A stretch of 64,000 nt of DNA from Trichosphaerium sp. ATCC 40318 (GCA_038496445.1 JALMLS010000309.1:372001-436000), one strand, 5' to 3'. Positions 37,648 to 63,291 are shown, counted from the first letter of the stretch. Made by a program: numbers and translations. Notes: a model not told the origin generated them from the letters alone.

Positions 37648-38270
37648 AGCCAAAGAAAAAAAAAAGAAAGAAAAAACAAACATGTACATAGTAAAATAAT
37701 ACTTGCAATCACAATCACAGCTTGCTTATTTATTTATTTGGGAGACTTTTTTTGTGCCTGCATTGAAGTGATAAGAAAGTACAATTTTATACACAAACAC
37801 CTCCTCTTTGCAAGTCAGGGATGCAGAATAAAGACATCTTAGCGGTAACAGCAGCTTGGTAAAAGTCTTGTAATTAGGTCAACGCTTCAGCCACTCAATT
37901 GACATTTATACGAGTGAAGAAGGGTAACTGTTTTAAATATATTTACTAAACTATCTTGCAATTGTATAAAAATGGCCTTTTGCTATCAAGGAATATCGTG
38001 ATAATGGTCAACTTTTCAAGGATGCCAAACACCAAAGAATAATAGTCAGCAAGTAAATATTGTATGGCATTCTAAGCTCAAAAGTACAAATATGTTCAGT
38101 TAGTCTAGTTTCTTGCAACGTCACAATTGTTAAAAACTTGGCCGTCACTCAAGGATGCAGAATAAACATGTGACTTATCCTTAACGGCTTTATGTTTGCA
38201 CCTAAAAATAGAATTCATCAGCTTTTAATCTTCCACTCAATATACAAGCTGAAGCTTATAGTAGTGTCAG

Positions 38271-39747
38271 ATGACGAATTTCCTTGGTATTTCCGTTGAA
38301 CAAGCAACTTCATACTATCGTAGGAACCACAAAGAAGAGTTCAGAAGAATTACTGAAGAACAAAGCGAAACATTCATAAACCAACTTGAAATCATCTTGT
38401 ACAATGCGAAAACAAGCCTTGCGTTACAATTAGACCAATATCTCTTTGAAAACGTTGAAACAGTATCTAAAACAAGCAAACTGCGTCAAGTACATTCTAA
38501 TCAGTATCGTACGCCAAAACATAGACAATCAAAGACCGCAGAGGTTGTAAAACGCAAACATACGTACGTTAAATCTAAATAAGGATGAAGTGTACTAACT
38601 CACTTTAACTAGATCACAGACAACGCTCAAAGTACAGAATATTCTCAAATTCCCACCAGAGGTTATTGCATGTATTCTCCACCATACAAAATCAAAAACA
38701 AGATTCATTGTTGCTCAGTCATGTCGTTTGATGGCTGATATCATCCACCATGTTGTTGGATATGAGAAGGTGTATATCTACAATATTCCAGACGTTTTAA
38801 GGATAAGACAGTACAAGGGTATCATGAACAATACCATTGTCAAGATGAGAGTAAAGAACAACACATTGTTTTCTTTATTGTCTGGATGTCGTATTCTTGA
38901 TACTACATTTGTGAGAAGGACACTTGAATCACATGAAGAAAGTAGTGTGATCAATGATCATGATCTTAAAGAGCTTGCAGGTGTTCACACTATTTATCTT
39001 TGTCGTTGTAAACATGTGACAGATGAAGGTATCAAAGCACTAAAAGGTGTTCATGAAATTCATCTTAATTGTTGTGATGTGACAGATGATGGTATCAAAG
39101 CACTTGCAGGTGTTCATACAATTGGCTTAGCAGGTTGTACTAAAATTACAGACGAGGGTTTCAAGTCGTTAAGTGGAGTTCACACAATTAATCTTTATGC
39201 GACATCAATTACTGATGCATGTCTCAAAGAACTTAAAGTGGTTCATTCCATTTATCTTGGTCGTTGTACATCTGTGACTGATGAAGGTATCAAAGCATTG
39301 AAAGGTATTCATACGATTTTTCTGAACAATACCTCAGTGACAGATGAGGGTATCAAAGCGCTTGCAGGCACTCATACTATACACCTTGGAGATACTGCAG
39401 TAACTGATGAAGGTATTCAAGCTCTTGCAGGTGTCCATGCCATTGATCTTAGTCATACATCAGTGACAGATGAAGGTATCAAATCACTCAAAGGGGTTCA
39501 TGCTATTAACCTTGCAAGCACTTCAGTAACAGACGAAGGAATCAAATCCCTAGTGGGAGTCCACACACTTGGAGTTATGCATTGCGAGCATGTGACTGAA
39601 GGAGGCATTAAAGCAGTACAAGGTCTCCACACTGTGCAGCTAAGTAGTGATCAACGGTGTGATTTTGGAGTATTTAGTGTTGAATGTCATGATCTCGATG
39701 GCAAGTTTCTAGAATTTACTCAAGACTTAATCAAATTCCCAAACTGA
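38271..39747 (+). CDS. F-box + leucine-rich-repeat protein, copy 1 (intron 38564..38612), intact
   Basis: A GTACGT..TACTAAC..TAG intron joins exon 1 to ILKFPPEVIACILHHTKSKTRFIVAQSCRLMADII (F-box) and about 10 VHxIxLxxTxVTDEGIKAL repeats. Confidence 0.9.
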
Positions 39748-39930
39748 TACTCAAAATTGTTTTGCAATGAACACTATGAGATAATCCGCCAACAACATCA
39801 ACCGTTAATTTAAACCACTTACAAATATAAAATCAAATAAAACAAAGTCTTATTTGAAACCTTGCTACGTTTTATTTTTAGGTAAATATTAAAAACCCAC
39901 GTGGGTATTACAACGGGATTGTCAAGCAAG

Positions 39931-41247
39931 TCATTGGTGAGCATCAGGTCCAGAAACTTGCGCACCATTATTGTACCAAGTGACTATCACTGGAGATTCA
40001 AGCCGCAATTGCCTTCCATCAAGCTTATTGTTGACATAATTGCAAGTTTTCTTCTTTGTACCATCACGATCCCAGCACTCCCATAACCCTTCCTTACTAC
40101 CTTGACTGTAAGTGCACAGCCTATGTAGTCCTCCATTTCTCCAATACTTCCTGTATTCTCCTTCTTTAACACCATTGCGGTAATGGCACACTACATCTAA
40201 ATAACCGTTTTCCCACCATTTCTTGAATTCGCCCTCCCGTTTGCCAACAGCATAAAAACATTGCTTCGATAATTGACCATTTTCAAACCATTCTTTGACC
40301 TCACCATGAATTTCATTGTCTTCTAAATAACATTGCCTCAACAAGTGTCCATTTTTGAACCACGTTTGGCACTTGCAACTATCTTTGCCTTCACTATTGA
40401 ATATCCATTCAGATTGTTGACCATCATCATGCCACTCCCTAATTGTCAACCGTTTACCCTCGAAGAAAAACGCCTTTTTCCACATTTTACCATTGCAATG
40501 GAAATAGTAGACATCTCCGTATTTCACACCATAAAAGTACATTTCTTGATATTGTAGCTGTCCCGTTTTGTAGTATTTTCTTTGTTTGCCGTGTCTTTCT
40601 CCTTCCTCATATTGGCGATGGCACTTCAATGCACCATTGCTAAAATACTCTTTATGGTCGCCGTGAAACTTCCCGTCCACCCTACTGTACTCTTTAACTT
40701 TGACACCCTGGAAGTATACTTCACGTTTCGCCTGCTCCATGCCATGAACAAAGAAAAAAAGCGTTGTAACGCCCTTGCCATTAAAGGTATAACACTTGCC
40801 ATGTTTTTGGTCATCAACAAAAGAACATATCGATTTTGTTCCTCCATTGGGGTACCAAACAAACTGTTCTCCTTGGCGTTTGCCACGAACGTAACAGATC
40901 AATGCTTTCAATTCACGTGACTCATCATTACCGGATTTAACCAAATACCACTCCTTTTTTATGCCATGTATTCTTCCGCTAACATAAGGTGTTTCCGTGG
41001 CTATCTTGGTTTCAGATTCGGCAAACCAAGTAAAGGCAGTCCAGTTCAAACTTCCATGATTGATTTTGAAGTTGCTGACTTCTTCCCCATCCTCACTCCA
41101 TTCGAGAAAATACCCATGCAAAGCCAAGTTCTTGTCAAAGCGAGTTGCAAAGGCTGCACGTTTACACAAAAGTGGCCATTTGGTGTACGCTTCATGATTT
41201 TGATATGATATCAGCCTTTGCAATGTCGCTGGTAGTTGCATAGCCAT
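39931..41247 (-). CDS. Intronless MORN-variant (YwqK-like) repeat protein, copy 1, intact
   Basis: 438-aa ORF with repeats such as HGEVKEWFENGQLSKQCFYAVGKREGEFKKWWENG; N-terminal QLPATLQRLISY..LLCKR is weakly F-box-like. Confidence 0.9.
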   Translation of the reverse strand: MAMQLPATLQRLISYQNHEAYTKWPLLCKRAAFATRFDKNLALHGYFLEWSEDGEEVSNFKINHGSLNWTAFTWFAESETKIATETPYVSGRIHGIKKEWYLVKSGNDESRELKALICYVRGKRQGEQFVWYPNGGTKSICSFVDDQKHGKCYTFNGKGVTTLFFFVHGMEQAKREVYFQGVKVKEYSRVDGKFHGDHKEYFSNGALKCHRQYEEGERHGKQRKYYKTGQLQYQEMYFYGVKYGDVYYFHCNGKMWKKAFFFEGKRLTIREWHDDGQQSEWIFNSEGKDSCKCQTWFKNGHLLRQCYLEDNEIHGEVKEWFENGQLSKQCFYAVGKREGEFKKWWENGYLDVVCHYRNGVKEGEYRKYWRNGGLHRLCTYSQGSKEGLWECWDRDGTKKKTCNYVNNKLDGRQLRLESPVIVTWYNNGAQVSGPDAHQ

Positions 41248-42215
41248 TGGTAGAGGTTTAGGAGCGTTCTTTAGCTACTAAAAGTTAGTTCAGCATTTAG
41301 GTTTTAAAGTGCCGTACTTGTCTCTTTGATACTGATTTCATTTCTTTATCGTTATATTTGAGAGGTGTGGTTGCTTTGTTGTGAGGTTTTGTATTATGAA
41401 AGGTTCAATTTCAATCAGTTCGTTTTCACAACTTTATCAATCACTTTCTTTATTAGACAACTTTTTGTGGATATTTACTATTTTCTATTGCGTGCCTAGA
41501 ACATATTCCGAAACTTGTTTGCATTTCTCAAAGTAAATTCTCCATACTAAGCTACAATAATAGCTGTATGAAATCAAAAGTGACCAGTAGTTCGAAGTAC
41601 TCATTCAATCTTGAAAAAACATGATTTAATTTCACTCACATCAGTCAACCGTGCAAATGCGACTTCTACTGTAGCTGTTAATATTGACATTTACAATTTA
41701 TGTGAGCAAAAGTTGCGGATACATATCAAAGATTGATAAAATAGTTCTAAACACAGAAAGTATCAGCTTTTTCGATTTAGCATCTTTGGTACACAAGTGG
41801 TGTGCTGCCAAATAAATACATGTTAGATCCAGAGTAATGGAGCTTGCCTGAAATAACACTATTTTAATTTAGCATTAAAGATACTCTTCAAGAGGTGACT
41901 CCAATCAGTAGCATGCACGTGACCTTTCTGGTCGTATGTACATAAAGTGCTCCATACATCAATAGGCCAGCTTGTGTACTCTGGGGCTGGCGTGCATTAC
42001 AAACAATCTCTGGAAAACTAGTCTTAGTCTGCAGTCTACAAATACAAGCAGACACTCGCGTTCTCAAAGCAAATCAATTGTTAGCAATCTTGCAAAGTCA
42101 CAATTTTTAAGAACTTGGCCGTCACCAAGAATGTGACAAGGACATTTATGTTCGCTGCTAAAAATAGAAATATCAGCTTAAACTTCCATTCAATATAAAT
42201 TGCTAGCAGTGTCAG

Positions 42216-43749
42216 ATGATGAATTTACTTGGTATTTCCGTTGAACAAGCAACCTCATACTATCACAAACACCACAAAGAAGAGTTCAGAAGAATTACTG
42301 AAGAACAAAGCGAAACATTCATAAACCAACTTGAAATCATCTTGTACAATGCGAAAACAAGCCTTGCGTTACAACTAGACCAATATCTCTTTGAAAACAT
42401 TGAAACAGCTTCTAAAACAAGCAAACTGCGTCAAGTACATTCTAATCAGTATCGTACGCCAAAACATAGACAATCAAAGACTACAGAGGTTGTAAAACGC
42501 AAACATACGTACGTTAAATCTAAATAAGGATGAAGTGTATTAACTCACTTTAACTAGATCACGGACAACTCACAAAGTACAAAATATTCTCAAATTCCCA
42601 CCAGAGGTTATTGCATGTATTCTCCACCATACAAAATCAAAAACAAGATTCATTGTTGCTCAGTCATGTCGTTTGATGGCTGATATCATCCACCATGTTG
42701 TTGGATATGAGAAGGTGTATATCTACGATATTCCAGACGTTTTAAGGATAAGACAGTACAAGGGTGTCATGAACAATACTACTGTCAAAATGAGAGTAAA
42801 GAACAACACATTGTTTTCTTTATTATCTGGATGTCATACCATTGATACAAGATTTACACGTATATATGAATCAGACAAAGAAGGTAGTGTGATAAATGAT
42901 CACGATCTTAAAGAGCTCGCAGGTGTTCACACTATTTTTCTTAGTCATTGTAAACATGTGACAGATGAAGGTATCAAGGCATTGGCTGGAGTTCATACAA
43001 TTCGTATTGGCTTTACTTCAACAACAGATGAAGGTATCAAAGCACTCAAAGGTGTTCATGAGATTCATCTTAATTGTTGTGATGTGACAGATGATGGTAT
43101 CAAAGCATTGGCTGGTGTTCATATAATTGGCTTGGCAGGTTGCACTAAAGTTACAGACGAGGGTTTCAAGTCGTTAAGTGGAGTTCACACAATTCATCTT
43201 AATGCGACATCAATTACTGATGCATGTCTCAAAGAACTTAAAGTGGTTCATTCCATTTATCTTGGTCGTTGTAAATCTCTGACTGATGAAGGTATCAAAG
43301 CATTGAAAGGTTCATACGATTTTCCTTGATGAGACTGCAGTGACAGATGAGGGTATCAAAGCACTTGCAGGCACTCATACTATACACCTTGGAGATACTT
43401 CAGTAACTGATGAAGGTATTAAAGCGCTTGCAGTGATCTTACTCGTACATCAGTGACAGATGAAGGTATCAAATCACTCAAAGGTGTGTACGCTATTAAC
43501 CTTGAAAGCACTTCAGTTACAGACGAAGGAATCAAAGCCCTAAGAGGCGTTCACTCACTTTGCTTAATGGATTGTGAGCATGTGACCAAAGCCGGTATTG
43601 AAGCAGTAGAAGGTCTCCACACTATTAATATAAGTATCAAGCGCTACTTTGATGATTATAATAGACAAATTAATGTTAGAGTTAACCATCTCTCACACAT
43701 GTTTTTGGAATATACACTTGGCTTACCAAAGTTTACAAGATATCAATAG
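42216..43749 (+). pseudogene. F-box-LRR copy 2, frameshifted
   Basis: 2-nt deletion near 43311 (AAAGGTTCAT vs AAAGGTATTCAT) gives a stop at 43329; a further 13-nt deletion near 43433. Confidence 0.8.
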
Positions 43750-44943
43750 TCTCACAACAAACATTGTATTCCAATTTTTCAACGATACAAAAACCATAAT
43801 AGGAGCAACGCATACAACAATAAAAACTCGCTACAAAAACAAACTGCATAATAAAAAAATCTGTTGTATTGTTTAGCAAATTATTGGCTAGTATAAAGGT
43901 CCTTAAGGAAACTTTCTCACCGTTCTTATAGCAAGAAACTTTTGGTTTTGAATATCCAAACAACTCATGTTTTCCCTCAAGCTTATTATTGACGTAATAG
44001 CACCTTTCCCTCTCATCTCCTTGAGGAAACCAGCGCATACATGGCCCTTCCAACACACCGTGACTGTAAGTGCACAACACATTCAAGTGATGATAATCTT
44101 TCCAATATTGTCTGTATTTTCCTTCTTTAACGCCATTGAGGTAACGGCACAGTATAAATACATAACCATCTAAAAACCATTCCTTGTACTCGCCTCCTAG
44201 TTTGCATCCAAGTGCATAGTTACAGCACATCTTCAATTGGCCATTCTCGAACCATTTTTTATACTCACCCATATGTGCGTCGTTAACATAATTGCATTCA
44301 GATTCTTGTTGACCATTTGCATGCCATGTCTTGCAGTCACCCTCTAGTTTGCCAAGAGCATAAAAACAGTGCTTCGATAATTGACCATTTTCGAACCATT
44401 CTTTGAACTCACCATGAATTTCATTGTCTTCTAAATAACAGAGCTTCAATAATTGTCCATTTTTGAACATTTGGTGCTTGCCAAAAACTTTGCCTTCACT
44501 ATTAAAAGTCCATTCAGATTGTTGACCGTCATGCCACACCCTGACTCCTAACCGTTTACCCTCGAAGAAAAACTCCTTTTTCCATATTTTACCATCACAA
44601 TGCCAATATTCGACCTCTCCGGATTTCACACCATAAAAGTACGTTTCTTGACACTGAAGCTGTCCCGTTTTGTAGTATTTTCTTTGTTTGCCGTGTTTAT
44701 CTCCTTCCTCATATTGGCGATGGCGCTTCAATGAACCATTGCTAAAATACTCTTTATGGTCGCCGTGTATCTCCCCGTTAACAAAAGGTGTTTCTGCTTG
44801 AGAAAATACCCATGAGAAGCCAAGTCCCTGTCAAAGCGAGTTGCAAAGGCTGCACGTTTACACAAAAGTGGCCATTTGGTGTACGCTTCATGATTTTGAT
44901 ATGATATCAGCCTTTGCAATGCCGCTGGTAGTTGCATAGCCAT
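43733..44943 (-). pseudogene. MORN-repeat copy 2, internally deleted and frameshifted
   Basis: Frameshifting deletion near 44797 after HGYFLK; in-frame loss of several repeats (ETPFVNGEIHG joined to DHKEY); frame runs past the position of the copy 1 and 3 stops. Confidence 0.8.
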
Positions 44944-45625
44944 TGGTAGAGGTTTAGGCGCGTTCTTAAGCTACTTAACGTTAGTTCAGTTGTTTGATAA
45001 GCATTTAGGTTTTAAAGTGCCGTACTGGTCTCTTTGATACTGATTTCATTCTTTATCGCTATATTTGAGAGGTGTGGTTGCTTTGTTGTGAGGTTTGTAT
45101 TTATCAAAGGTTTAATTTCAATCAGTTTGGTTTTCACAACTTTATCAATCACTTTCTTTATTTAGACAATTTTTGTGGATATTTACTATTTTCTCTATTG
45201 CGGCCTAGAACATATTCCGAAACTTGTTTACATTCCTGAAAGTAAATTCTGCTTACTGAGCTACAATGATAACACCTCTTTGAAAGCAAAAGTGAGAGGT
45301 AGTCAATCTTGAAACAAACTTAGAGGTTTGATTTTCGCTCAAACTGATGTAAACTTAAATATAACATACAGAGAACCTTGTTTATTTATGTGAATTTACA
45401 AGTTAAGAACCCATCTCTAGGTCACTCTAGAACCGGTTTTATACATCAACACCTCAATAACCGTATCATCAAAGTGATAAGAAGATCTTTTTGATGAATA
45501 CCAGAAAAATGTATGGTGTTGAAGTTCTTTTATCAAGACGTCAAGACTAAAGCTTTTTTTGTTGTTTTTTTTTAAATGGTTTTTTTTTTCCTGCAAGGAG
45601 GACGGGAGCTTCTAAAAAGAACTAA

Positions 45626-48600
45626 TCAAGTCGTTATTGTCTCTGCTACCTGTTTATAGCTCCAAATACGACTCTTGAAGTCTCCTGATCCTGTAGCAAA
45701 CTTTCCTGATGTGGCATCACTTGTAATACTGCTCAAAGCAACGCTAATAACTAAGAAGGATTGTTAGAAAAAATGTGCTCCGTTTGAATTTCAAAAGACT
45801 TTATCAGTGCTAGTATACGTACCAGAGTTCGAATGGCCATGTAAGATAATATGAGGTGTCCCCGTGCGTGGATCCCAAAACTGTAACGTACGATCTTTAC
45901 TACCGCTAACAAGCCAACGACCATCTGGGCTGTATGCAACGGATAGAACAAAGTCCTAAAAAGGAATCAAAATCAGAAAACTTCTCCGTTTCTTCTTTTT
46001 CTTTGAAAAATAAACACTGCGTACCTTGTGACCTGTTAGTGTGTTTTTACACCGAGAGCGAGATCTACCACTCAAGTCCCATATATTTACCGATCTATCA
46101 AGCGATCCACTTGCCAAGGACTTACCATCAGGTGAAAACGCAACAGAGTATACAGAATCTTCATGACCTTCATATCTATCCACGAAAAAACCAGTTCTAG
46201 CATCCCAAAGGCGCACAATCTTATCAAGGGATCCAGCAGATACAAGAGTTCCTGCTTTATTAACTGAGACCGATGTAACTCCATCCTTTGGTCCAACTTC
46301 ATCATTACCAAGAGTGTGTAAGCACTAATGAATGTAAATGTCAAATTAACCAAAAAAAAAAAGGAACCGTTAGCGAACTTCCGCTTTTATTTCTGGTTAC
46401 GCACCTCGCCAGTTTCCATATCCCATATCTTAATCTTTCTATCACCTGAACCAGACACGATTTTGGTACCATCAGAGGAGAAGTCAAGTGAGTAAATATC
46501 GAGTTCATGACCTTCTAAAGTATATCTTATTGTTTTTGTTTGAATATCCCAAACCTTAACAGTCTTATCCTCTGCCCCAGTCACCAAGAATTTCGAATCT
46601 GGACTGAAACACACTGAACGAATGTACAAATCACCGCCAGATGGGTTACCATCAGCAAAAGTACTAAAAAAAATGATAAGAAGCAACGTGTGAGAAAAAA
46701 AACAAGACTTCGGCTGACTTTGGGAGCACCACTTTGCTAAAACGAAACAAATTCGTCTAAAAGGTTCAAACAAACGTACTGGACTTTTTTCCCTGTTTCT
46801 GTGTCGAAAATATTAGCGGCTCTATTACATCCAGTAGCGAGATACTTAACATCGCGAGAAAACTCAACACAGCAAACAACGCTGCTGTGATCAAGCGTAT
46901 GCGCTAGATCGACTTCTAGGCATCGTGTTACGGCCGGATTATAGCTAAAGAAACGAAGTTAATCACCAAAAAACACAAAAAAAAAATAGGAAAAAAGGTA
47001 CACACTCTCTCATTCACCGACAATAAATGAGCGTAATGTACTGTTGGTAAACGCGGTATTTTTTGGACGCCAAATATACGTTACGTATTGCGTGAATTAA
47101 AAGTGTGCGACAAAACGACGCGCAACAAAAAACTGCACAGCGAAAAAAATCTGTAACACAACCAAAAAAGATGCGAAATTTCTCACACCGCCTGATTTTT
47201 ACGTAGAACATACGCGTAGAGCGTGTAAGAGGTTTTCTAAATTAAAACGTACCACACGAGCCAATCAGGTCCTTTCTCTTCTGTAGGTACATTACCAGGT
47301 TGAGGCGCAAAGTTAGCACCCATTTGAGCATTATTGGCGCCTTGTGGTCTTGTTACAAGAACATCTGCGTTGATTGGCGGTGCAGCCGTCTCTTCTACGA
47401 CCCTGGCGGCCCTATAGCGCGTTAACCATATTAACAGTTCAGAAAACAAAAATTCAGACAAAAATCGCTCTAGCCTTCGTAGTCGGAAATAAAAATACGT
47501 ACGGCGTGCCGTTAAGCGCTGGAAGGTTTGGAGCCGGAGCTTGTGGCAATGGTTGTGAAGGTTGAGGTTGCTTTGTATTTGTGATGGCCTTTATTGGTGG
47601 TAAACCGTTGTGACCCATAGGTTGCGCTTTTGGAGCTGCTGGTGGTGGAGCTGCCGCGAGGTTAGGTATTTCTACAGGCTTATTAGCTAAAAAGCAAGTC
47701 GTGATAGAGTGTAGGAAGGTTTTCCAAAAAAACTTTGTACTTCGTTTACTAAAACTACTTCAAACGCGTTTGGAAATGAATACGCCAGCATTAAGCGCTC
47801 TTTAGTTAAAAACTGAAAAAAAAAAAATGTGACGTACTACTAGGCGCTGGACTTGTACGCGGTCGCTTTTGCAATGGTGCGAGTTCAGAGTGCTCATGGC
47901 GTCCTAGAAGGAAGGTAAATATCACTCTACAATAAAAATTGCTGTGACGTTCATTTTCGACAAAAAAGGCATTACAGCTGCCTCTTCCTTCCTAAAACAT
48001 TTCCAAAGCGCAATTCAAAAAAAAACAATTTAAAAAAGCTGTTTTATCACAATCCAATAGGATTTCTTCAACATACGTTTAGTGCCACCAGGTTGCATTG
48101 GGTTCAAGCCAAGTGCGGGAGGTGCGCTTCCATTTGTAGTTGTATTTGCAGACTGCCCGTTAGTTGTTCGAGCAAACGAAGTGTGTGTAGAAACAGTTGG
48201 GGTATTGGTGGTTGTGTTTGGTACTGTTGTAGCTGCGCCTTGATTTTGAGCCGGTTTTCCTCCCAGTTCCTTTATTTGATGTCGTAGACGCATATTTTCT
48301 TCCTCATACCTGTTGAAGATGGTTTTAGCAATAGTCGGGCTTTTATTTGAGCTTTTGTAAAATAAAAAGCTGTTGCGAAAACACGAAAAGCCTTGGTTTG
48401 AAGGACCACGATGGCGCGTTGTTGCGTACTGTTTTTTGATGGCCTGATGGCTGCGGTCTAGATCCCTAATTTCTTGCTGAAAATTGCTGCTCTCTTGTAC
48501 TTGCGCTTGTACTATTACCATTGAGTTAGTGGGTAAGTAATTCAGCCGTTAGTCAAAAAAATCGAAAAACAGCGTTGGAAGCAGAAGCTGTCGAATAAAA

Positions 48601-48994
48601 GCCCATTGCTATTAATTTATAGTGGTGGGCGATTAATTCGTAATAGAAATTACTATAAGCGCTGTTGTGCAGTTTAGCGCCGCTTTTTTTAAAATAATCC
48701 AATGCAATCTAAAAATCAAACACAACCAACCAAAAGAGGGTAGAGTTGTTGGGGGAGGTGCTCAATTAAGAAAAGTTTCGATTATGGGTGAAAGCGCCAC
48801 GTACTCTTTCTTTCAAATTCATCTCTTTCTCTCTGCAATATTTGGCGTTGTTTTGATAATTGGTCAAACTCGTGTTTTAGCTTATCAAATAGCTCTAGGT
48901 AACCACTGCTAGTCGCAATTTGCGCCACTGAAGCTCCTACTACTGCTGGTCGAACACGTTGCCCTCCGTGGTTCTGGCCATGTGGTTGAAACAT
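45626..48994 (-). CDS. tupA: Tup1/TupA WD40 transcriptional corepressor
   Basis: N-terminal [24 protein letters not shown] coiled coil; [80 protein letters not shown]. Confidence 0.93.
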
Positions 48995-49224
48995 TGGTTA
49001 TTCTACCAGTTTGTACTATACGAGTTTAAAAGGCAGCACCACTCCTTGAGGACATAAAAATAATATGGTTTTTTAATCCGGACCACAGCTTAACTGCGGG
49101 TTGGGAGGAATCAAAATCTGGCGTTTGACCTCGCCCAAACCACACCTCCTTGACTTTTTTTTTTTGGTATTCGTCCTACAGTCATTCCACAAGTATTTTG
49201 AGGCGTTTGGCATCATTTTAAAGA

Positions 49225-50139
<915 letters not shown>

Positions 50140-50504
50140 ATAAAGAACTAATACAAGAAACAAATAAAAAAGAATGGTGTCGTGATCAACTAAGACACGT
50201 GCCATCAAAATTCTAATGACATTCTATTTGTGTTTACCTACTCTTTGTAGTTTTGTTGTTTACAAATCATGCAATTGAGTGATCTATCGCCGTGCCTACA
50301 CAACTTAAATGGGGTTTTGACATCAACTTATTAATTAATCAATAACTCCAACAATTCACCTGCAGATCTTACCGCCTCTTCTTAATAGCCTTGTGGCCAT
50401 TATCAATATAAAGATGGTATTGAAGTGCTAGTTCAGATTGTGACATAAATTGTGTTGATATGTACTCAGGCGCGTTTGATGTTTCTTTAGAAATATTTTG
50501 TTTT

Positions 50505-53500: not shown

Positions 53501-53875
53501 TACCCTCCTTTGATAGATATGCTACTACCTTTGGTGGCGCTGAAGAAAAAGAAGGAAGTTTCTTTTGATGATTTTTGATTTTTTTGGTTTGGGATGTGTT
53601 GTCTTGTGTTTCATCATTTGTTGCTTTGATTAAAGACTTATCCTCACGGGATGCGCTATTATATGGTTATTTGGAAACATAAAGCAGTAATTACTGTACC
53701 TCATACGCAGATTTATCGCTCTACGATCACTAGGAGCGTCATGAGACTCTAGTAAGCGTACTATTAGTATTTAAACGCGAAATAAAAAAAAGCTGAGCGT
53801 TCTTTTCGACATTTCAACTCTTTAGTGCTAACCTTTCTTACTCTTCGTGGGCGCTTTTGCTGGACACCATGACAT
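50505..53875 (-). CDS. Ankyrin repeats + F-box + degenerate Rab-like GTPase domain in one multi-exon gene
   Basis: GDNPIHVLA, DGDTPLHYC, ETLLHCA, AGETALHYAA; exons splice in frame into SLLPIEVWSHVFGFV..MAWTCRTF (F-box), then IKIVLVGDLGVGRH..KAIKLQL..SFKSVAKWHRDV..EVSAKTNYNVQKLF. Confidence 0.72.
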
Positions 53876-54739
53876 TGTTTATATACAGTTGAGAGTATTT
53901 AGTCGTGTTAAATTTACAAAAATACTTCAAATGGGGTACCAAATGGCACGTGTTTATATGGTTGTACTCGAACAAAAAATTTACGAAACGTTTTTTTTTG
54001 GGTTTTCTGAGTTTGACCACCACAGGATTTTCTGTAAATCTTAAATGGTAGCTAACACTGTGGATAATATAAGGGGATCGTATATCATTGATTTTGGCTA
54101 GCGTATCTACTAACAGCTTCACATGATGACGAAGAATGTCGTTACCAAACTTGAGAATTTCTCTTTTTGTTATTGCTTTAACAGTCATTCTAGTATTAAG
54201 TCATATCTTGCTAAGTTTAACCTAATCGTGGAGTATGTTGTATCAAATAACATATCTAAGCATTGGCAGATCTCCTGTAAAGAGCTGTCATTGTTGAACA
54301 ATTTGTGATTGTGGGAAACTAAGGGAAACCACAAGAAGGAGAGTGCTGGAAAGAGTATTACCGATTGAGTTCCATCAAGCAGTGCCTTGAATCACATATC
54401 CTGCTATTGTTTCGTGAAATGAAAACCGGTCATTTATGTACGTTTAAATCAAAAGTCTAAGAATCAATAGCGCGAGGTGATGGCTTCAGACAACGTACAT
54501 GTGGTTGAAAAAATATATCTTTGTGTGACTGTAACCCTATATTATGGCCACTATTTCTAGACTTGTCAGTGCGCCTTAGGTTCAACAACAATTCCAATAA
54601 TATAGAAAACTCAAAAAGTATGTACGGAGAACTGAATATATGTCTTTGGCAAGTGTGGCTTCACTTGTTAAAGAGTTTTCGTTCAGTGAAGTAATCGCTT
54701 ACACGTGTACGTTTTTTTTATTCATTTTTCAGAATAAAT

Positions 54740-56422
54740 ATGAGCAATACTACTGATGAAGAGAAAAAAGATGCCGAACAGCTAAAAGAAGCATTGAGTA
54801 AACTGAATACTGCCCTTGATGAGTTATTTAAAGATGATATCACAGATAGCGATATGGTTGAGGCCATGGGTACTATACGGGCTGAATTAGGGACCTGGTA
54901 TTGTATTTGTGACTTTTTCTACCACTAACAGTAGAAAAAGGGATTGGAAGCATTCATGTATGACTTATAGGCGATACGTGAGTTCGTTGACAACCTTTAG
55001 CGGAAACTCGCCGTTTTTGCTTAAAAAGAGATATTGTGCCGTTTTACAAGCGATTGCTAGATAATGATGAGTATGCACTGTTTGTTGTAACATGTATTTG
55101 GCATTTTGTATCAGACGGTACGATTTCTTGACCAAAAAAGCTTGCCTTTGATTTTGAAGTCTTATTCTTTTCAAAAGAGGAGTTTGTGAGGCCTTTCTAT
55201 CTTGCGGGTGTTGTTCCTACTTTTGCGAAGATGATGTCGTCAAAAGATCGGGATGAAAGGTCAAATGGTTCAGGAATCATGACAAATTTTTTAGAATATG
55301 GCACGTGATAGAAAAACAGACAGTTTGTTTGACAAAAAAACCCCACCTATATGAAATTTGTTGTTGCATCTTTGTACTCACATTCTTCCTTTGGTTCAAG
55401 TTAACGCCGATTTTATAGAAGAAATACGTAGTGAAGCTGCACATAATGGTGTCTTAGATTCTTGCTTTAAGTACTACACCGAAGAAGCGTACTTTGTATG
55501 CCTTACACTTCTCATCAACAATGGTACACTTATGTTTCACTTTATATGTTTGTTTAATTAAAGTTAATGTATGAAGCTGAATGTCGTAAACGTATTGTTA
55601 CTTGGGACCTTCTCAAACAAATGTTCATCATTAAAACTGATGATACTCTTCATATGCTTTGTTCTATTCTCAATGATAGTGAGTTTCATGCGCTCCTTCC
55701 TCACAATTTTGAATCTCAACAGCTTGCCTAGAATCACTACAAAAGATAGTAGAAGACATTGATTTATCAACAGAAATAGAAGAACATGAGAAATACTTGG
55801 AAGAACACAAAGGACCGAAATTAAAAGAGTAATAGAAAGAAAAAACGAAAAACTCAGTTTTGGTTTTCTTCTAATAGCTTCTTAGACAAGCTGAGCTTCA
55901 GGATGGTATTCTTTATCATGTTATACAACCGTTTTATGATTTTTCTAAATCTCAAATACCTATTGTACATCGTTATGGCGCATTATGCATGGCTGCATGT
56001 TCATATAGACGTACGACCTCTAATCATTTTATATTTGTCTGTGATTTTCTATTGCACCTTTCACATGTTATCTTTGTAGTTGGCACGTGTATTCAACTAA
56101 AAGCTACAATACACAGTGTCATGATTTTTAATAACAGTCATTCATTTATTCCAAGTAACATTGCTTTTTGTAAAAACACGTGGAAGATAAAAATGTTGTC
56201 TGACTTTGTTATTATTTTCTAGAAGTCTACAAAGATCGTATAGTCGATCGTAAATGGACTGATTACTTGTTCTGTTTTCAGTGGTCTTCTGACAATACTA
56301 TTAAATCATATGGAAAGGAAATTATAGATAACTTGAAGCCATACAATCCTCCTTCATTGTTCACTCTAACCAAATGGTTCATGAGAAAAAATAACATTAC
56401 TGTACCTGCAAACTTTGCTTAA
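54740..56422 (+). CDS. ARM/HEAT-like helical protein with C-terminal BC/SOCS-box-like motif
   Basis: Helical repeats (AGVVPTFAKMMSSKDRDERSNGSGIMTNFL); C-terminal NPPSLFTLTKWFMRKN; GC-AG intron 55301..55400. Confidence 0.55.
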
Positions 56423-56948
56423 AATATATTTTATACGACACCAACGAATAACGACTACAACATAAAGTCAAAATTGAAAGTCTGAGAGACGTACAAACTC
56501 AGTGAAAAATCAAAAAAAAAAACCATTAACCGATGTGCAAAGAGTGAATCACAGTTTTTTCAAGATTGAATGAGTACTTCGAACTACTGGTCACTTTTAA
56601 TTTCATACACTGCTATTATTGTAGCTTAGTATGGAGAATTTACTTTGAGAAATGTATACAAGTTTCGGAATATATTCTACGCCCGCAATGAAGAAAATAG
56701 TAAATATCCACAAAAAATTGTCTAAATAAAGAAAGTGATTGATTGATAAAGTTGTGAAAACGAACTGATTGAAATTAAACCTTTGATAAATACAAAACCT
56801 CACAACAAAGCATCCACACCTCTCAAATATAACAATAAAGAAATGAAACCAGTATCAAAGAGACCAGTACGGCACTTTAAAACCTAAACGCTTATCAAAC
56901 AACTGAACTAACGTTAAGTAGCTAAAGAACGCTCCTAAACCTCTACCA

Positions 56949-59620
56949 ATGGCTATGCAACTACCAGCGACAGTACAAAGGCTGATATCATATCAAAATC
57001 ATGAAGCGTACACCAAATGGCCACTTTTGTGTAAACGTGCAGCCTTTGCAACTCGCTTTGACAAGAACTTGGCTTTGCATGGGTAGGGACGATTTTTGTA
57101 AGCAGTTCACACTTTCAAAAAAATTCTAGGACACCTCAAAAACGTTATTTATGTCCAATTTTTGAGTATACTTCAGAATACATATGTGTTTATAATATAT
57201 ATTAACCAGAACTTGCTGGTAATTAATAGTGTGCTTCAATCAACTATTTCATTGAAACTAAAACTGAGTTATTTCTGCTTGGGATCATATTCTTATCCTC
57301 TAACACCACCATGTTTTGCAGGTAACTCTTTTACATCATGATGAGTAAGGATTACATTCTTTCGTTTAATGCATTTTTTATCACTTTCAGTGTCCCACAT
57401 AAAGCTATCGTCACCTGTCTCTAGACCAGATTGTTGTCAATTGGTCGTTCTTTTGAACAATCATTCTAATCCACAAAAACCTTTTTCAAATCTTTCCTTT
57501 TGGCTGCAGGTGCTCAATAAATCATGGTGTACGTATGCACAGTTATAGCGTATTTGATAATTTTGGTATCAAAATACAGAGGTTTCTTTTTCAAAGAAGT
57601 TGATGAACATAATATTTACATGAAAATGTCAAAAAACTCACTCTTGCTTGGGTACTTTATTGCATCAGATAGCCACAAAGGTTGATGTAGTTATTTTTTA
57701 CCACTATAGGAGTTTTAGAGACAGAACTTGGTTTTCGAATGGAGATACTTCAGGCTTTACCAAAAACAGGTTCATTGAAACTGTGTCACTACACTCCATC
57801 AACTATTGCTATAAATTACACTGTGTAATACCACACATATTGACTATCACTATGAAAAGTGTGGGATGGTCAATTAGCTCTTGAGGTATTTAATTCCAAA
57901 AATCGCTTATTGTCCACTAGTACAGAATATTGGAATTTATCAATTACACAAGGCTCGACAAGCTTAAAACTAATCTCAATACATGACAAATAGCATTAGG
58001 TGACACTTCTGTAATTTAAACACTTGTCAAAGCTTGTGTAATTGTTAATTTTGGGAACTCGCTTTTTTTTCATTCTGTACCCTGAAAACTAACGTTTTCA
58101 GCGTTTCCCGTGCGATAAACGTCATTTGCAGGTACTTTATAGAAACGCCCTCGTATTTTGGTAGCATACGCTCTGTTTTTGCCAATAACCCGTGAATTGC
58201 ATTTCAAGCACCTTGTATGGTGACACAACTCTTGAATCATCTGTTTGCGTGCATTGAAGCTCAGTTGGTGCTTTTTTAGTTAAGTCAAAACAAAAACCAC
58301 AAAAAAACTCGTAAAATAGTAAATAATTTATTTTACACTTAGATCTTAACAATGGAGCCAGCCATTGTAGGAGTACCTTCACATACGCAAAATCATTAAT
58401 ATGAGAGGTGTGAACTGCATACAAAAATCGTCCCTATTTTCTCAAATGGAATCGTGCTGGGGAAAAAATCAGTCACTTCAAAATCAATCATGGAAGTTTG
58501 AACTGGACCGCCTTTACTTGGTTTGCCGAATCTGAAACCAAGATAGCCACGGAAACACCTTATGTTAGCGGAAGAATACATGGTATAAAAAAGGAGTGGT
58601 ATTTGATTAAATCCGGTAATGATGAGTCACGTGAATTGAAAGCATTGATCTGTTACGTTCGTGGCAAACGCCAAGGAGAACAGTTTGTTTGGTACCCCAA
58701 TGGAGGATCAAAATCGATATGTTCTGTTGTTGATGACCAAAAACATGGCAAGTGTTATACCTTTAATGGCAAGGGCGTTACAACGCTTTTTTTCTTCGTT
58801 CATGGCATGGAGCAGGCGAAACGTGAAGTATACTTCCAGGGTGTCAAAGTTAAAGAGTACAGTAGGGTAGACAAGAAGCTTCACGGCGACTATAAAGAGT
58901 ATTTTAGCAATGGTGCATTGAAGTATCATCGCCAATATGAGGAAGGAGAAAGACACGGCAAACAAAGAAAATACTACAAAACGGGACAGCTACAATATCA
59001 AGAAATGTACTTTTATGGTGTGAAATACGGAGATGTCTACTATTTCCATTGCAATGGTAAAATGTGGAAAAAGGCGTTTTTCTTCGAGGGTAAACGGTTG
59101 ACAATTAGGGAGTGGCATGCTGATGGTCAACAATCCGAATGGAATTGTGACAACGAAGGCGAAATCTGTGGCCAGCGGAAAACGTGGTTCAAAAATGGAC
59201 AATTATCGAAGCTGGGTTATGTACACAACTTTCATGGTGAGTACAAATTTAAAGGTGAGTACAAAGAATGGGCAATTATCGAACCAATCTAATTATGCTC
59301 TTGGCAAACTGGAGGGTGAATTCAAGACATGGTGGGAAAACGGTAATTTACGTAAGCTTTGTCACTACCGCAATGGTTTTGAAGAGGGGGAATGCAAGAT
59401 GTACTGGAAGAATGGAAATCTGAATGTGCTGTGCACTTACAGTCAAGGTAGTAAGGAAGGGCTATGGCAGTACTGGAATCGTGATGGCAAAAAGAAGAAC
59501 ACTTGCAATTATGTCAACAATAAGCTTGACGGAAAGCAAGCGCAGTTTGAATCTCTAGTAGAGGTACTTAGTTGGTACAAGAATGGTGTGAAAGTTTCTG
59601 GACCCGATTCTCACAAATGA
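56949..59620 (+). pseudogene. MORN-repeat copy 3, interrupted by a TIR element and frameshifted near 59270
   Basis: MAMQLPATVQRL..LALHG, then the insertion, then YFLKWNRAGEKISHFKINHGSLNW continues in frame; later an FEN-coding deletion shifts the frame. Confidence 0.88.
57086..58434. mobile_element. Non-autonomous or degenerate TIR DNA transposon, 1349 bp, TA target-site duplication
   Basis: 27-bp TIR GGGACGATTTTTGTA[A/T]GCAGTTCACAC with 1 mismatch; TA at 57084-57085 and 58435-58436; the empty site CATGGGTATTTTCTC is present in copies 1 and 2. Confidence 0.93.
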
Positions 59621-59789
59621 TGTGCTTGGCAACGCCATTTATTTTCCAATTGTCTAAAAAATAAAACAGATTTTGTACTATGCTGCACTTTTATTGTACA
59701 CTTTGTGAAGATTGTAAGCATTCGACCCTATGTAATTATCGCTTGCTATTTGTAATGAGTCATCCCAAAGAGAAAACGCATTGATTGCA

Positions 59790-61316
59790 TCAGTTAGGGA
59801 ATTGGATTAAGCCTTGGGTAAATTCTAAAAACATACCATCGAGATCATGATATTCAACATTCTTAATTACTGAGAAATTATCCATAAAAGAATGACTTAC
59901 ATTAACAATGTGGAGACCTTCTACAGCTTCAATACCGTCTTTGGTCACATGCTCACAATACTTAACTCCAAGCGTATGGACTCCCACTAGGGATTTGATT
60001 CCTTCGTCTGTAACTGAAGTGCTTTCAAGGTTAATAGCATTTACCCCTTTAAGTGATTTGATACCTTCATCTGTCACTGATGTACGAGTAAGATCAATGG
60101 CATGGACACCTGCAAGCGCTTGAATACCTTCATCAGTTACTGCAGTATCTCCAAGGTGTATAGTATGAGTGCCTGCAAGTGCTTTGATACCCTCATCTGT
60201 CACTGAGGTATTGTTCAAGAAAATCGTATGAATACCTTTCAATGCTTTGATACCTTCGTCAGTCACTGATGTACGACCAAGATAGATGGAATGAACCACT
60301 TTAAGTTCTTTGAGACACGCATCAGTAATTGATGTCGCATAAAGATGAATTGTGTGAACTCCATTTAACGACTTGAAACCCTTGTCCGTAACTTTAGTGC
60401 AACCTGCTAAGCCAATTGTATGAACACCTTTGAGTGCTTTGATACCATCATCTGTCACATCACAACAATTAAGATGAATCTCATGAACACCTTTGAGTGC
60501 TTTGATACCTTCATCTGTTACTGATGTACAAGGAAGACGAATTGTATGAACACCAGCCAATGCCTTGATACCTTCATCTGTCACATGTTTACAATGACAA
60601 AGAAAAATAGTGTGGACACCTGCAAGCTCTTTAAGATCGTGATCATTGATCACACTGCCTTGTCTCAAAAAGCTTGCATCAATGGTACGACATCCAGATA
60701 ATAAAGAAAACAATGTGTTGTTCTTTACTTTCATTTTGACAATGGTATTGTTCATGACGCCCTTGTACTGTCTTATCCTTAAAACGTCTGGAATATTGTA
60801 GATATACACCTTCTCATATCCAACAACATGGTGGATGATATCAGCCATCAAACGACATGACTGAGCAACAATGAATCTTGTTTTTGATTTTGTATGGTGG
60901 AGAATACATGCAATAACCTCTGGTGGGAATTTGAGAATATTTTGTACTTTGTGCGTTGTCCGTGATCTTGTTAAAGTGAGTTAGTAGTTAGGAAATACAC
61001 TTGATCCTTATTTAGATTTAACGTACGTATGTTTGCGTTTTACAACCTCTGTAGTCTTTGATTGTCTATGTTTTGGCGTACGATAGTGATTAGAATGTAC
61101 TTGACGCAGTTTGCTTGTTTTAGAAGCTGTTTCAACGTTTTCAAAGAGATATTGGTCTAGTTGTAACGCAAGGCTTGTTTTCGCATTGTACAAGATGATT
61201 TCAAGTTGGTTTATGAATGTTTCGCTTTGTTCTTCAGTAATTCTTCTGAACTCTTCTTTGTGGTGTTTGTGATAGTATGAGGTTGCTTGTTCAACGGAAA
61301 TACCAAGTAAATCCAT
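59790..61316 (-). CDS. F-box + LRR protein, copy 3, intact
   Basis: Same two-exon structure as copy 1; open 353-aa LRR frame with one more repeat than copy 1. Confidence 0.9.
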
Positions 61317-61679
61317 AATCTGACACTACTATAACCGGACCTTATAAGTAGCGTAAATAAAAATGACAACTATTTTTAGCAGCAGAATAAGTCACATGTT
61401 TGTTCTGCATCCCGTATGTGAGGTAAGGTATTTTAAAAGTTGTTGTTCTAGTCACTTCAAGATAGGTCAGGAAAAGGTGTAAGGAACTATTTGAAGTGTT
61501 GGCCGTTACTTCATTTAGGACAACATATTGTATATTGGCTTTGAAACGTCTTCGAGTGAACTCATTTTTATGAGCAGCAGATTTTGCTCTTGGTAAGTTT
61601 ATGTAATGTTTGTACAAAATTAGCACACAGCACTAGATACTACAAGTGATTTTGCGGTGCACGTGATTGACATTTGATT

Positions 61680-63200: not shown

Positions 63201-63291
63201 TCCATCAACCACTTTGATACCCTCGTCAAATACTGAAGTGATATTAAGGTAAATACTATGAACCCAGCAGTGCTTTGATACCTTCATCAGG
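63201..63291 (-). pseudogene. Relic of the cassette LRR gene
   Basis: DEGIKAL, frameshift, VHSIYLNITSVFDEGIKVV; same GATGAAGGTATCAAAGCA nucleotide repeat. Confidence 0.65.

What the first reader, a model, noticed from the sequence alone, without database searches (positions are those of the whole stretch)
38110..61415. Triplicated convergent F-box-LRR / MORN-repeat two-gene module
Seen: the same tail-to-tail pair, with flanking noncoding DNA, occurs three times (two direct, one inverted, with conserved genes in between) and always moves as a unit. The MORN gene is intronless and the LRR gene has one intron, in a very intron-dense region. Known: MORN-variant repeats typify bacterial YwqK-like antitoxins and amoebal giant viruses, and short-LRR F-box families are also expanded in giant viruses. 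Inference: a horizontally acquired, co-inherited pair of repeat-scaffold binders coupled to SCF, acting as an anti-virus/anti-endosymbiont module or a selfish unit. The MORN N-terminus (QLPATLQRLISY..LLCKR) may itself be a degenerate F-box.
Basis: partly seen in the sequence, partly recalled or inferred. Interest (0 to 1): 0.8.

Follow-up and report, generated by a model that had tools for sequence, protein, structure and literature searches.

The report
Triplicated F-box/LRR and MORN gene pair
A 3.5-kb stretch holding two neighbouring repeat-protein genes (an F-box/LRR ubiquitin-ligase adaptor and a MORN-repeat protein) has been copied three times in what is almost certainly the marine amoeba Trichosphaerium; both belong to large giant-virus-associated families already published for that genome, two of the three copies are decaying, and evidence that the genes work as a pair is weak.

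Summary
One unit occurs three times at 83-98% DNA identity: A 38111-41620, B 42088-45303, C 56554-61334 (inverted). Each holds a convergent F-box/LRR gene and a MORN_2 gene.

Only copy A is intact in both genes. B is broken in both. C keeps the LRR gene, but its MORN gene has frameshifts and a nested non-autonomous DNA transposon.

The LRR gene is a genuine FBXL-type F-box protein: 49-nt intron, top structural matches FBXL2-SKP1 and FBXL17-SKP1. The proposed F-box at the MORN N-terminus fails three tests.

Gene order, GC and intron statistics place the window on scaffold 00025 of Trichosphaerium sp. (Tekle et al. 2023). There the three LRR genes are already listed as putative giant-virus transfers (TRSP32999, 33001, 33008; 'Harvfovirus8_11'; not detected in the transcriptome).

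'Moves as a unit' follows from segmental duplication. In 241 ordered genes of that genome, MORN-type and F-box-type genes are adjacent about 3 times more often than chance, but 10 of 16 MORN-type genes have no such neighbour. About 17 distinct viral-type loci show no linkage.

Verdict: an ordinary local duplication of two known expanded families, with a weak hint of recurrent pairing. Interest is low to moderate.

The parts
38111..41620 (.). Duplication unit, copy A (both genes intact)
   Evidence: blastn and the repeat finder bounds; intact ORFs
38271..39747 (+). F-box/LRR gene, copy A: exon 1 38271-38563, intron 38564-38612 (GTACGT..TACTAAC..TAG, 49 nt), exon 2 38613-39747; 475 codons
   Evidence: MMETSP transcripts with the same architecture support the splice model; corresponds to TRSP32999
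38641..38754 (+). F-box domain of the copy A LRR gene
   Evidence: Pfam F-box E 1.4e-3, 18.9 bits, just under the cutoff; helices 15-48 in the AF2 model and FBXL-SKP1 complexes as top Foldseek hits
38938..39642 (+). LRR solenoid of about 11-12 short (21-residue) LRR_6-type repeats
   Evidence: Pfam LRR_6 E 1e-19; 63-nt internal repeat period (family D1 in copy C); AF2 strand-helix repeats at pLDDT above 90
39931..41247 (-). MORN_2 (YwqK-like) repeat gene, copy A: intronless, 438 codons, intact
   Evidence: repeats start near residue 40; AF2 all-beta hairpin array, pLDDT 81.7; presumed TRSP33000
42088..45303 (.). Duplication unit, copy B (tandem to A; both genes broken)
42216..43749 (+). F-box/LRR gene, copy B, broken: exon 1, intron signals and F-box intact; the exon-2 reading frame is interrupted at least once
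   Evidence: corresponds to TRSP33001, modelled with 3 introns
43733..44943 (-). MORN_2 gene, copy B, broken: large deletions totalling about 400 nt, at least one frameshift (2 frames used), original stop lost
45959..48548 (-). Neighbouring host gene between B and C: Tup1-like corepressor (Tup_N plus WD40 exons)
   Evidence: Pfam; matches TRSP33003 'transcriptional repressor TUP1'
56554..61334 (.). Duplication unit, copy C (inverted; LRR gene intact, MORN gene broken)
56949..59620 (+). MORN_2 gene, copy C, broken: at least two frameshifts (3 frames used) plus one nested insertion of about 1.35 kb, bounded by 29-nt terminal inverted repeats with flanking TA and no recognisable ORF (non-autonomous DNA transposon)
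   Evidence: no second copy of the insertion in the window
59790..61316 (-). F-box/LRR gene, copy C, apparently intact: one frame over exon 2, one extra 21-residue repeat, 60-nt intron with conserved donor and branch point and an AG acceptor
   Evidence: corresponds to TRSP33008

Best explanation
The window is almost certainly part of scaffold 00025 of the Trichosphaerium sp. (Amoebozoa) draft genome. A segment of about 3.5 kb carries two neighbouring, convergently transcribed genes. It was copied twice by ordinary segmental duplication, once in tandem and once inverted across the TUP1 gene, and the copies later exchanged sequence by gene conversion. Gene 1 is an FBXL-type F-box/LRR protein of the 'Harvfovirus8_11-like' family, which has at least 182 rows in the published table for that genome. 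It has a lineage-specific N-terminal domain of about 97 residues (exon 1), an F-box expected to dock on Skp1, and a solenoid of 21-residue LRRs expected to bind a substrate. It therefore most likely acts as a substrate receptor of an SCF ubiquitin ligase. Gene 2 is a MORN_2 ('YwqK-like') protein, an array of about 17 beta-hairpin repeats. It most likely acts as a protein- or membrane-binding scaffold and belongs to a second, very large family in the same genome. The two genes travel together here because they lie in one duplicated segment. The duplicates are not maintained: only copy A keeps both reading frames, copy B has lost both, and copy C has lost the MORN gene to frameshifts and a transposon. 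Shown: the duplication, the gene structures, the domain folds, the decay, the family sizes and the viral relatives. Inferred: Skp1 binding, scaffold function, organism identity (indirect but strong) and gene conversion.
For: Repeat map and identities. ORF and intactness analysis. TIR-bounded nested insertion without an ORF. Splice model and its conservation across copies. MMETSP transcripts with 47-51% identity and the same exon-1 domain, F-box, linker and LRR architecture. Pfam LRR_6 and MORN_2. AF2 and Foldseek: FBXL2-SKP1 6o60_C at E 3e-12 over 416 columns, plus FBXL17-SKP1 and KDM2A-SKP1. The MORN model matches giant-virus MORN proteins at E 1e-28 to 1e-17 and apicomplexan and trypanosome MORN1. 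Organism: published GC 37.69%, mean intron 75 bp and mean exon 154 bp (PMC10521059) against about 37% in the window. TRSP32999, 33001 and 33008 ('Harvfovirus8_11', with 1, 3 and 1 introns) flank TRSP33003 (TUP1) with exactly the spacing the window's gene order predicts. dN/dS is 0.32-0.38 for the LRR gene and 0.54-0.60 for the MORN gene. The GC and GC3 of both genes fall in or near the range of neighbouring host exons. Mirrored gene-order duplications also occur elsewhere in that assembly.
Against: Adjacency of YwqK-type genes with F-box or virus-hit repeat genes is about 3-fold above random order in 241 ordered genes: 7 pairs against 2.2 expected, P 0.004. Collapsing one tandem run gives P 0.04. 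The parts not chosen for a pair give P 0.012, or 0.12 collapsed. One further YwqK plus Harvfovirus8_11 pair lies on scaffold 00149. Pure chance neighbourhood is therefore not fully satisfying. Organism identity rests on table matching, not on sequence identity. The assembly used long reads, so a few small frameshifts in B and C could be assembly errors; the large deletions and the transposon cannot be.
Confidence: 0.72

Rival explanations
1. One reading: the F-box/LRR gene and the MORN gene form a functionally coupled, co-inherited two-gene cassette. For example, one could be an SCF receptor and the other its adaptor, substrate or decoy, acting in antiviral or anti-endosymbiont defence or as a selfish unit that spreads as a pair.
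For: The same kind of pair (a YwqK-type gene next to a Harvfovirus8_11-type gene) occurs on another scaffold, TRSP10581/10582. Harvfovirus20_10-type and F-box genes also sit next to YwqK-type genes, at TRSP10679/80, 10757/58 and 10726-29. Adjacency is about 3-fold enriched, P 0.004 to 0.12 depending on treatment. Both families co-occur in the same giant-virus lineages, Harvfovirus and Hyperionvirus.
Against: The three local copies are one duplicated segment, not three independent linkages. Only 1 of 3 copies keeps both genes. 10 of 16 YwqK-type genes sampled have no such neighbour, and 2 of 3 other Harvfovirus8_11-type genes seen in context have no annotated YwqK neighbour. None of about 17 distinct viral-type loci carries both families within the held flanks of up to 10 kb per side. 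MMETSP relatives of the LRR gene exist at about 50% identity, but no MORN relative above about 34% overall identity exists anywhere. PADLOC finds nothing. The three LRR genes are marked not detected in the transcriptome. Some 'pairs' in the table may be mis-split gene models.
Confidence: 0.15
2. The module is a fragment of an integrated giant-virus genome, an endogenous viral region recently inserted and then duplicated.
For: The best public hits for the LRR genes are Harvfovirus proteins, with Alien Index 86-103. GVMAG and IMG/VR relatives reach 28-56% local identity. The highest local identity for the MORN repeats (43-44%) is on giant-virus-like contigs. BFVD matches are strong. The MORN gene is intronless, with the highest GC3 in the window (0.41 against 0.27-0.38).
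Against: No viral hallmark gene was found, and intron-rich host genes flank each copy. The LRR gene has a spliceosomal intron with host-type signals. It also has an N-terminal domain absent from all 11 viral relatives and present only in eukaryotic transcripts. GC matches the surroundings. The closest LRR relatives are eukaryotic transcripts, not viral proteins. Transfer could equally have gone from host to virus.
Confidence: 0.08
3. The triplication is an assembly artefact of a long-read draft genome, such as a fold-back or collapsed-repeat error.
For: The source assembly mixes Nanopore, PacBio and Illumina reads. It shows mirrored gene-order blocks with identical BLAST E-values elsewhere.
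Against: The copies differ by 2-17% in sequence and have copy-specific indels, an extra LRR repeat, a private transposon insertion and different flanks. Artefactual duplicates would be near-identical.
Confidence: 0.03

Closest known systems
FBXL-type F-box proteins (FBXL2, FBXL17, KDM2A/FBXL11), substrate receptors of SCF ubiquitin ligases
   Same: An N-terminal three-helix F-box followed by an LRR solenoid. These are the top Foldseek PDB matches over the full length of the exon-2 product, all solved in complex with SKP1. Pfam LRR_6 matches.
   Different: Only 13-19% sequence identity. The repeats are short, at 21 residues. An extra N-terminal domain of about 97 residues, encoded by exon 1, has no Pfam match. 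The Pfam F-box score is just below the gathering cutoff. Skp1 binding is not shown.
'Hypothetical protein Harvfovirus8_11' and other F-box/LRR_6 proteins of protist giant viruses (Klosneuvirinae-type MAGs, GVMAG contigs)
   Same: This is the best public match for these very genes in the published annotation (PMC10521059, Table S3). 11 IMG/VR loci encode relatives at 28-56% local identity, some with a detectable F-box. The viral genes form tandem clusters.
   Different: The viral relatives lack the exon-1 domain and the intron. They are less similar than the eukaryotic MMETSP transcripts, which reach 47-51%. None has a MORN_2 neighbour within the held flanks.
MORN_2 / 'YwqK family antitoxin' repeat proteins (PF07661) of bacteria
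   Same: The repeat motif: Pfam MORN_2 at 66 bits against a cutoff of 29.6. There are thousands of bacterial and metagenomic hits. Paralogues in the source genome carry the same annotation label.
   Different: There is no toxin partner and no toxin-antitoxin context. This is a eukaryotic nuclear gene. Similarity is repeat-driven, at 34% overall or less.
MORN-repeat proteins of giant viruses (Marseillevirus LCMAC102, Orpheovirus, Pithovirus LCPAC, Harvfovirus, Hyperionvirus)
   Same: Similar length (about 300-600 aa) and the same beta-hairpin array. BFVD Foldseek E-values run from 1e-28 to 1e-17. The highest local sequence identity is on giant-virus-like contigs L003 and L004.
   Different: 14-20% identity in structural alignments. 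No orthologue was found. Some viral versions carry T5orf172 and DUF5758 N-terminal domains that are absent here.
Published catalogue of giant-virus-derived genes in Trichosphaerium sp. (Tekle et al. 2023, PMC10521059)
   Same: The paper states that F-box and MORN are the commonest domains among about 1,570 putative viral transfers, about 40% of them with introns. It lists TRSP32999, 33001 and 33008.
   Different: The paper does not describe this triplication, the convergent pairing, the decay of copies or any test of linkage.

Membership tests
FBXL-type F-box/LRR protein | F-box domain recognised by a curated profile | tested here: inconclusive
   Pfam F-box scores 18.9 bits (E 1.4e-3) against a cutoff of 20.5; F-box-like has E 0.026. 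Relatives P0042 and P0065 carry precomputed Pfam F-box hits.
FBXL-type F-box/LRR protein | Fold: helical F-box packed onto an LRR solenoid, as in Skp1-bound FBXL structures | tested here: met
   AF2 pLDDT 83.3 and pTM 0.78. The top PDB matches are FBXL2-SKP1, FBXL17-SKP1 and KDM2A-SKP1, at E 3e-12 to 4e-10 over 412-528 columns.
FBXL-type F-box/LRR protein | C-terminal leucine-rich repeats | tested here: met
   Pfam LRR_6 at E 1e-19; designed LRR proteins and internalins in the PDB sequence search.
FBXL-type F-box/LRR protein | Binds Skp1 and assembles into an SCF ligase | not testable with these tools
   No complex prediction or experiment is available here.
MORN_2 / YwqK family (PF07661) | Multiple MORN_2 repeats above the gathering score | tested here: met
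   66.2 bits against 29.6; the AF2 beta-hairpin array runs from residue 44 to the C-terminus.
YwqK-type antitoxin of a toxin-antitoxin pair | Encoded next to a cognate toxin gene | tested here: not met
   The neighbours are the F-box/LRR gene and spacer DNA. No toxin-like Pfam hit was found among the ORFs scanned in the window. PADLOC finds nothing.
F-box protein (as claimed for the MORN gene's N-terminus) | F-box detectable in residues 1-48 | tested here: not met
   No Pfam hit at E up to 10. The session HMM scores -1.9 bits, and 581 of 1000 shuffles score as high. HHalign gives probability 0.2% and P 0.38, against 58% and 1e-4 for the positive control. AF2 predicts no helices, though with pLDDT below 50. 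None of 185 MORN_2 relatives has an F-box.
Co-inherited two-gene module | Linkage at independent loci beyond the local duplication | tested here: inconclusive
   One further YwqK plus Harvfovirus8_11 pair was seen. Adjacency is about 3-fold enriched, P 0.004-0.12. However, 10 of 16 MORN-type genes and 2 of 3 other Harvfovirus8_11-type genes have no such neighbour. The sample is 241 of about 27,000 genes.
Co-inherited two-gene module | Both partners kept intact in each copy | tested here: not met
   Only copy A keeps both. B has lost both. C has lost the MORN gene.
Co-inherited two-gene module | Linkage conserved in viral relatives | tested here: not met
   No MORN gene lies on the 12 loci holding F-box/LRR relatives (L002, L005-L015), and no LRR or F-box gene lies on the 8 MORN loci (L003, L004, L016-L021; some overlap, about 5 distinct).
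Giant-virus-derived gene (published Alien Index criterion) | Best public hit is viral, with Alien Index above 45 | tested here: met
   For the LRR genes only, taken from the paper: AI 90, 86 and 103. The MORN genes (presumed TRSP33000, 33002, 33007) are absent from the stored part of the tables. The criterion does not give the direction of transfer.
Non-autonomous cut-and-paste DNA transposon (nested insertion in copy C) | Terminal inverted repeats, short target duplication, no transposase | tested here: met
   29-nt TIRs at 97% complementarity with a TA at each end. The two homology blocks overlap by 2 nt in copy A, consistent with a TA duplication. No Pfam-recognisable ORF. The superfamily is not determined.

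The most novel reading that the evidence does not exclude
In Trichosphaerium, and possibly in the giant viruses it exchanges genes with, MORN_2-type genes and F-box-type genes form a recurrent, functionally coupled cassette. The MORN protein could be an adaptor, decoy or substrate of the neighbouring SCF receptor. The cassette would proliferate as a unit, and the triplication here would be one visible burst of that process.
Probability: 0.12. Interest if true: 0.6.

Novelty: new member of a known kind. Interest (0 to 1): 0.3.

Why it matters
The finding gives a concrete, dated example of how two giant-virus-associated repeat-protein families expand and decay in an amoebal genome. The sequence is segmental duplication (tandem and inverted), gene conversion, transposon insertion and pseudogenisation. 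It also shows that 'viral' F-box/LRR genes in the amoeba have acquired a host-type intron and a lineage-specific N-terminal domain. That cautions against reading Alien Index hits as recent virus-to-host transfers. The only possibly new biology is the modest excess of MORN and F-box adjacency. If it held genome-wide, it would point to an unrecognised partnership between SCF receptors and MORN scaffolds at the host-virus interface.

Tried and rejected
1. Exact look-ups of three window proteins found nothing. This fits an unannotated WGS deposit.

2. The third word search, with a PPP-phosphatase exon and meant to place the organism, returned nothing because of the length filter. That search was wasted.

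3. The MORN N-terminus as an F-box was rejected by three tests.

4. I looked for a remnant of copy C's transposon in copy B, to order the events. None was found.

I used P0217 and P0198 as queries instead.

6. The PDB sequence search for the MORN protein found nothing. PADLOC and Rfam also found nothing.

7. One Pfam call failed because of a bad reference. A corrected set of ORFs from the insertion was scanned later.

8. I did not build a phylogeny of either family. Both are internally repetitive, alignments are register-ambiguous (mean column identity 18-19%), and a tree would not be trustworthy.

9. The stop-codon counts printed for LRR exon 2 are wrong, because I used the wrong codon phase. 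Ignore them. Intactness rests.

Full report
OBSERVATION

The repeat is real. The repeat finder and blastn show one unit three times: A 38111-41620 and B 42088-45303 in direct orientation, and C 56554-61334 inverted. Segments are 83-98% identical. The region's GC (about 0.37-0.39) is the same as the rest of the window.

Each unit carries two genes tail to tail. One is a + strand gene with LRR_6 repeats (Pfam E 1e-19). The other is a - strand gene with MORN_2 repeats (E 6.5e-19). In copy A, 183 bp separate the two stops.

The shared DNA extends about 150 bp upstream of the LRR gene and about 370 bp upstream of the MORN gene. Between B and C lie intron-rich host genes, including a Tup1-like corepressor. 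No other member of either family occurs in the window.

GENE MODELS

In copy A the LRR gene has exon 1 at 38271-38563 and exon 2 at 38613-39747. The 49-nt intron has GTACGT at the donor, a TACTAAC branch point and a TAG acceptor.

In one search I joined the two exons in memory only, to check length (1428 nt, in frame) and internal stops (none). The joined product was not printed, saved, searched or folded. All searches and the structure prediction were done exon by exon, by reference, so the joined-product search was left out.

Transcripts independently support the splice model. MMETSP proteins P0033, P0034, P0035 and P0153 are 47-51% identical. They carry, in one chain, a domain homologous to exon 1, then the F-box, a conserved linker and the LRRs. 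Donor, branch point and an AG acceptor are conserved in B and C. Copy C has an 11-nt insertion inside the intron.

The MORN gene of copy A is an uninterrupted 438-codon ORF.

STATE OF THE COPIES

Only copy A is intact in both genes.

In copy B, the LRR gene keeps exon 1, the intron signals and the F-box, but its exon-2 reading frame is interrupted at least once. Its MORN gene has large deletions totalling about 400 nt and at least one frameshift, and has lost its stop.

In copy C, the LRR gene reads through in one frame with one extra 21-residue repeat. Its MORN gene needs three reading frames, so it has at least two frameshifts. It also carries one nested insertion of about 1.35 kb.

That insertion is bounded by 29-nt terminal inverted repeats (97% complementary) with a TA at each end. 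It has no recognisable ORF and no second copy in the window. It is therefore a non-autonomous cut-and-paste DNA transposon.

I compared the pieces on either side of the insertion separately and joined nothing across it. I do not list break positions here.

Between copies, dN/dS is 0.32-0.38 for the LRR gene and 0.54-0.60 for the MORN gene. Identities are mosaic. B and C are closest in the 5' part of the LRR gene, while A and C are closest in the MORN gene and its upstream DNA. This suggests gene conversion.

WHAT THE PROTEINS ARE

The start of exon 2 gives a borderline Pfam F-box match of 18.9 bits against a cutoff of 20.5. An AF2 model of the exon-2 product is confident (pLDDT 83.3, pTM 0.78). 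It shows N-terminal helices packed onto a regular LRR solenoid. Its best PDB matches are FBXL2-SKP1, FBXL17-SKP1 and KDM2A-SKP1 over the full length. I accept it as an FBXL-type F-box/LRR protein, most likely an SCF substrate receptor. Skp1 binding is inferred, not shown.

Exon 1 encodes a domain of about 97 residues with no Pfam match. It occurs only in the window copies and the MMETSP transcripts.

The MORN protein is an array of beta hairpins from residue 44 to the end (pLDDT 81.7), and the repeats begin near residue 40. Its structural matches are giant-virus MORN proteins: Marseillevirus LCMAC102, Orpheovirus, Pithovirus, Harvfovirus and Hyperionvirus, at E 1e-28 to 1e-17. It also matches MORN1 of Toxoplasma, Plasmodium and Trypanosoma.

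The exhaustive search found 22,430 hits. All are repeat-driven, at 34% overall identity or less. The best local identity (43-44%) is on giant-virus-like contigs. No orthologue exists in the library.

Pfam finds nothing at E up to 10. HHalign gives 0.2% probability, against 58% for a positive control.

SOURCE ORGANISM AND PRIOR KNOWLEDGE

A literature search led to Tekle et al. 2023 (PMC10521059) on Trichosphaerium sp. That genome has GC 37.69%, a mean intron of 75 bp, a mean exon of 154 bp and 8.7 introns per gene. The authors state that F-box and MORN are the commonest domains among their putative giant-virus transfers.

Their tables list TRSP33003 as TUP1 on scaffold 00025. TRSP32999, 33001 and 33008 are listed as 'hypothetical protein Harvfovirus8_11', with Alien Index 90, 86 and 103, and 1, 3 and 1 introns. 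All three are marked not detected in the transcriptome.

The numbering matches the window exactly: LRR-A, MORN-A, LRR-B, MORN-B, TUP1, three further genes, MORN-C, LRR-C. The three 'introns' in 33001 fit a predictor bridging the breaks in copy B. I therefore take the window to be that locus. This is an inference from tables, not a sequence match.

The family is large. The stored part of Table S3 alone has 182 'Harvfovirus8_11' rows, and the stored part of Table S2 has 51 'YwqK' and 18 'MORN' mentions.

IS IT A LINKED MODULE?

Within the window the three copies are one duplicated segment, so they are not independent evidence of linkage.

Elsewhere in the genome I read 241 genes in scaffold order (Table S2 parts 7-9). 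Sixteen are YwqK-type. Seventeen are F-box, Harvfovirus, Hyperionvirus, Tupanvirus-hypothetical or LRR type.

Seven adjacent pairs occur against 2.2 expected (P 0.004). Collapsing one tandem run gives P 0.04. In the two parts not chosen because of a pair, the count is 5 against 1.5 (P 0.012, or 0.12 collapsed).

One of these pairs is a YwqK gene next to a Harvfovirus8_11-type gene on scaffold 00149. Against that, 10 of the 16 YwqK-type genes have no such neighbour. Two other Harvfovirus8_11-type genes, TRSP10133 and TRSP11876, also have no annotated YwqK neighbour.

Three explanations cannot be separated from the table: regional clustering of both families, mis-split gene models, or true pairing.

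On viral-type DNA there is no linkage. Eleven IMG/VR loci and one Logan contig hold F-box/LRR relatives without a MORN gene in the held flanks. Eight MORN loci, about five of them distinct, hold no LRR or F-box gene. Each family instead forms tandem clusters of its own kind.

ORIGIN

The direction of transfer is open.

The LRR gene has a host-type intron and an N-terminal domain absent from the viral relatives. Its closest relatives are eukaryotic transcripts. Composition is host-like, although the MORN gene has the highest GC3 in the window (0.41 against 0.27-0.38). No viral hallmark gene lies in the window.

VERDICT

This is a local segmental duplication of two adjacent members of two known, massively expanded, giant-virus-associated repeat-protein families. 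Two of the three copies are decaying.

The F-box/LRR call is right. The MORN F-box call is wrong. The 'co-inherited module' is at best weakly hinted by a modest genome-wide excess of adjacency.

I file it as a new member of a known kind, with interest 0.3.

Noticed in passing
window 8634-9326 (+) and 20353-21261 (-): A second inverted duplication in the window. Two Pfam-confirmed F-box ORFs (E 1.5e-7 and 7.5e-7) are about 67-73% identical as proteins, on arms 81-93% identical, about 11 kb apart. They are unrelated to the LRR gene at E 1e-4 or better.
   Followed up: partly
window 56949-59620 (MORN gene of copy C) and 43733-44943 (MORN gene of copy B): The large deletion in copy B ends within about ten bases of the site where copy C carries its TIR-bounded transposon, yet B holds no remnant of it. 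This may be coincidence, or excision followed by deletion repair. It is unresolved.
   Followed up: partly
window 41296-41620, 45004-45303, 56554-56888: The noncoding DNA upstream of the MORN gene is 93.5-96% identical between copies. It is less diverged than the synonymous sites of either gene (dS 0.15-0.46). This points to gene conversion or a constrained regulatory stretch.
   Followed up: no
window 63206-63290: An isolated fragment of about 80 nt is 73-78% identical to the LRR repeat unit. It lies outside the three copies and in no long ORF.
   Followed up: no
L002 1732-5601 (Logan SRR28401850 contig): An F-box/LRR_6 gene sits beside DUF723 and a TnpB/Fanzor-like gene (HTH_OrfB_IS605, OrfB_IS605, Cas12f1-like_TNB). 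The contig is dense, same-strand and intronless, and looks like giant-virus DNA.
   Followed up: no
L003 5757-15331 (NCBI GCA_013565555.1, contig JACCDP011087084.1): A tandem cluster of several MORN_2 genes lies on a dense intronless contig inside a very fragmented assembly of unknown organism. It looks like giant-virus-type DNA. Nothing suggests it is human, and I searched for no more of it.
   Followed up: partly
Table S2 of PMC10521059, scaffold 00149, TRSP10535-10542 and TRSP10548-10555: Mirrored gene order with identical BLAST E-values in the two arms. Inverted segmental duplications, or fold-back assembly artefacts, recur in this assembly.
   Followed up: no
Table S2 of PMC10521059, TRSP10726-10729: The run is F-box (83 aa), YwqK (431 aa), F-box (247 aa), YwqK (235 aa). 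It may represent mis-split F-box-MORN fusion genes or a tandemly duplicated pair.
   Followed up: no
window 34798-36696 (+): A 632-codon single-exon ORF encodes a highly acidic, low-complexity protein with an alanine/glutamate/glutamine-rich repeat core. It has no Pfam family above cutoff and is not on record.
   Followed up: no
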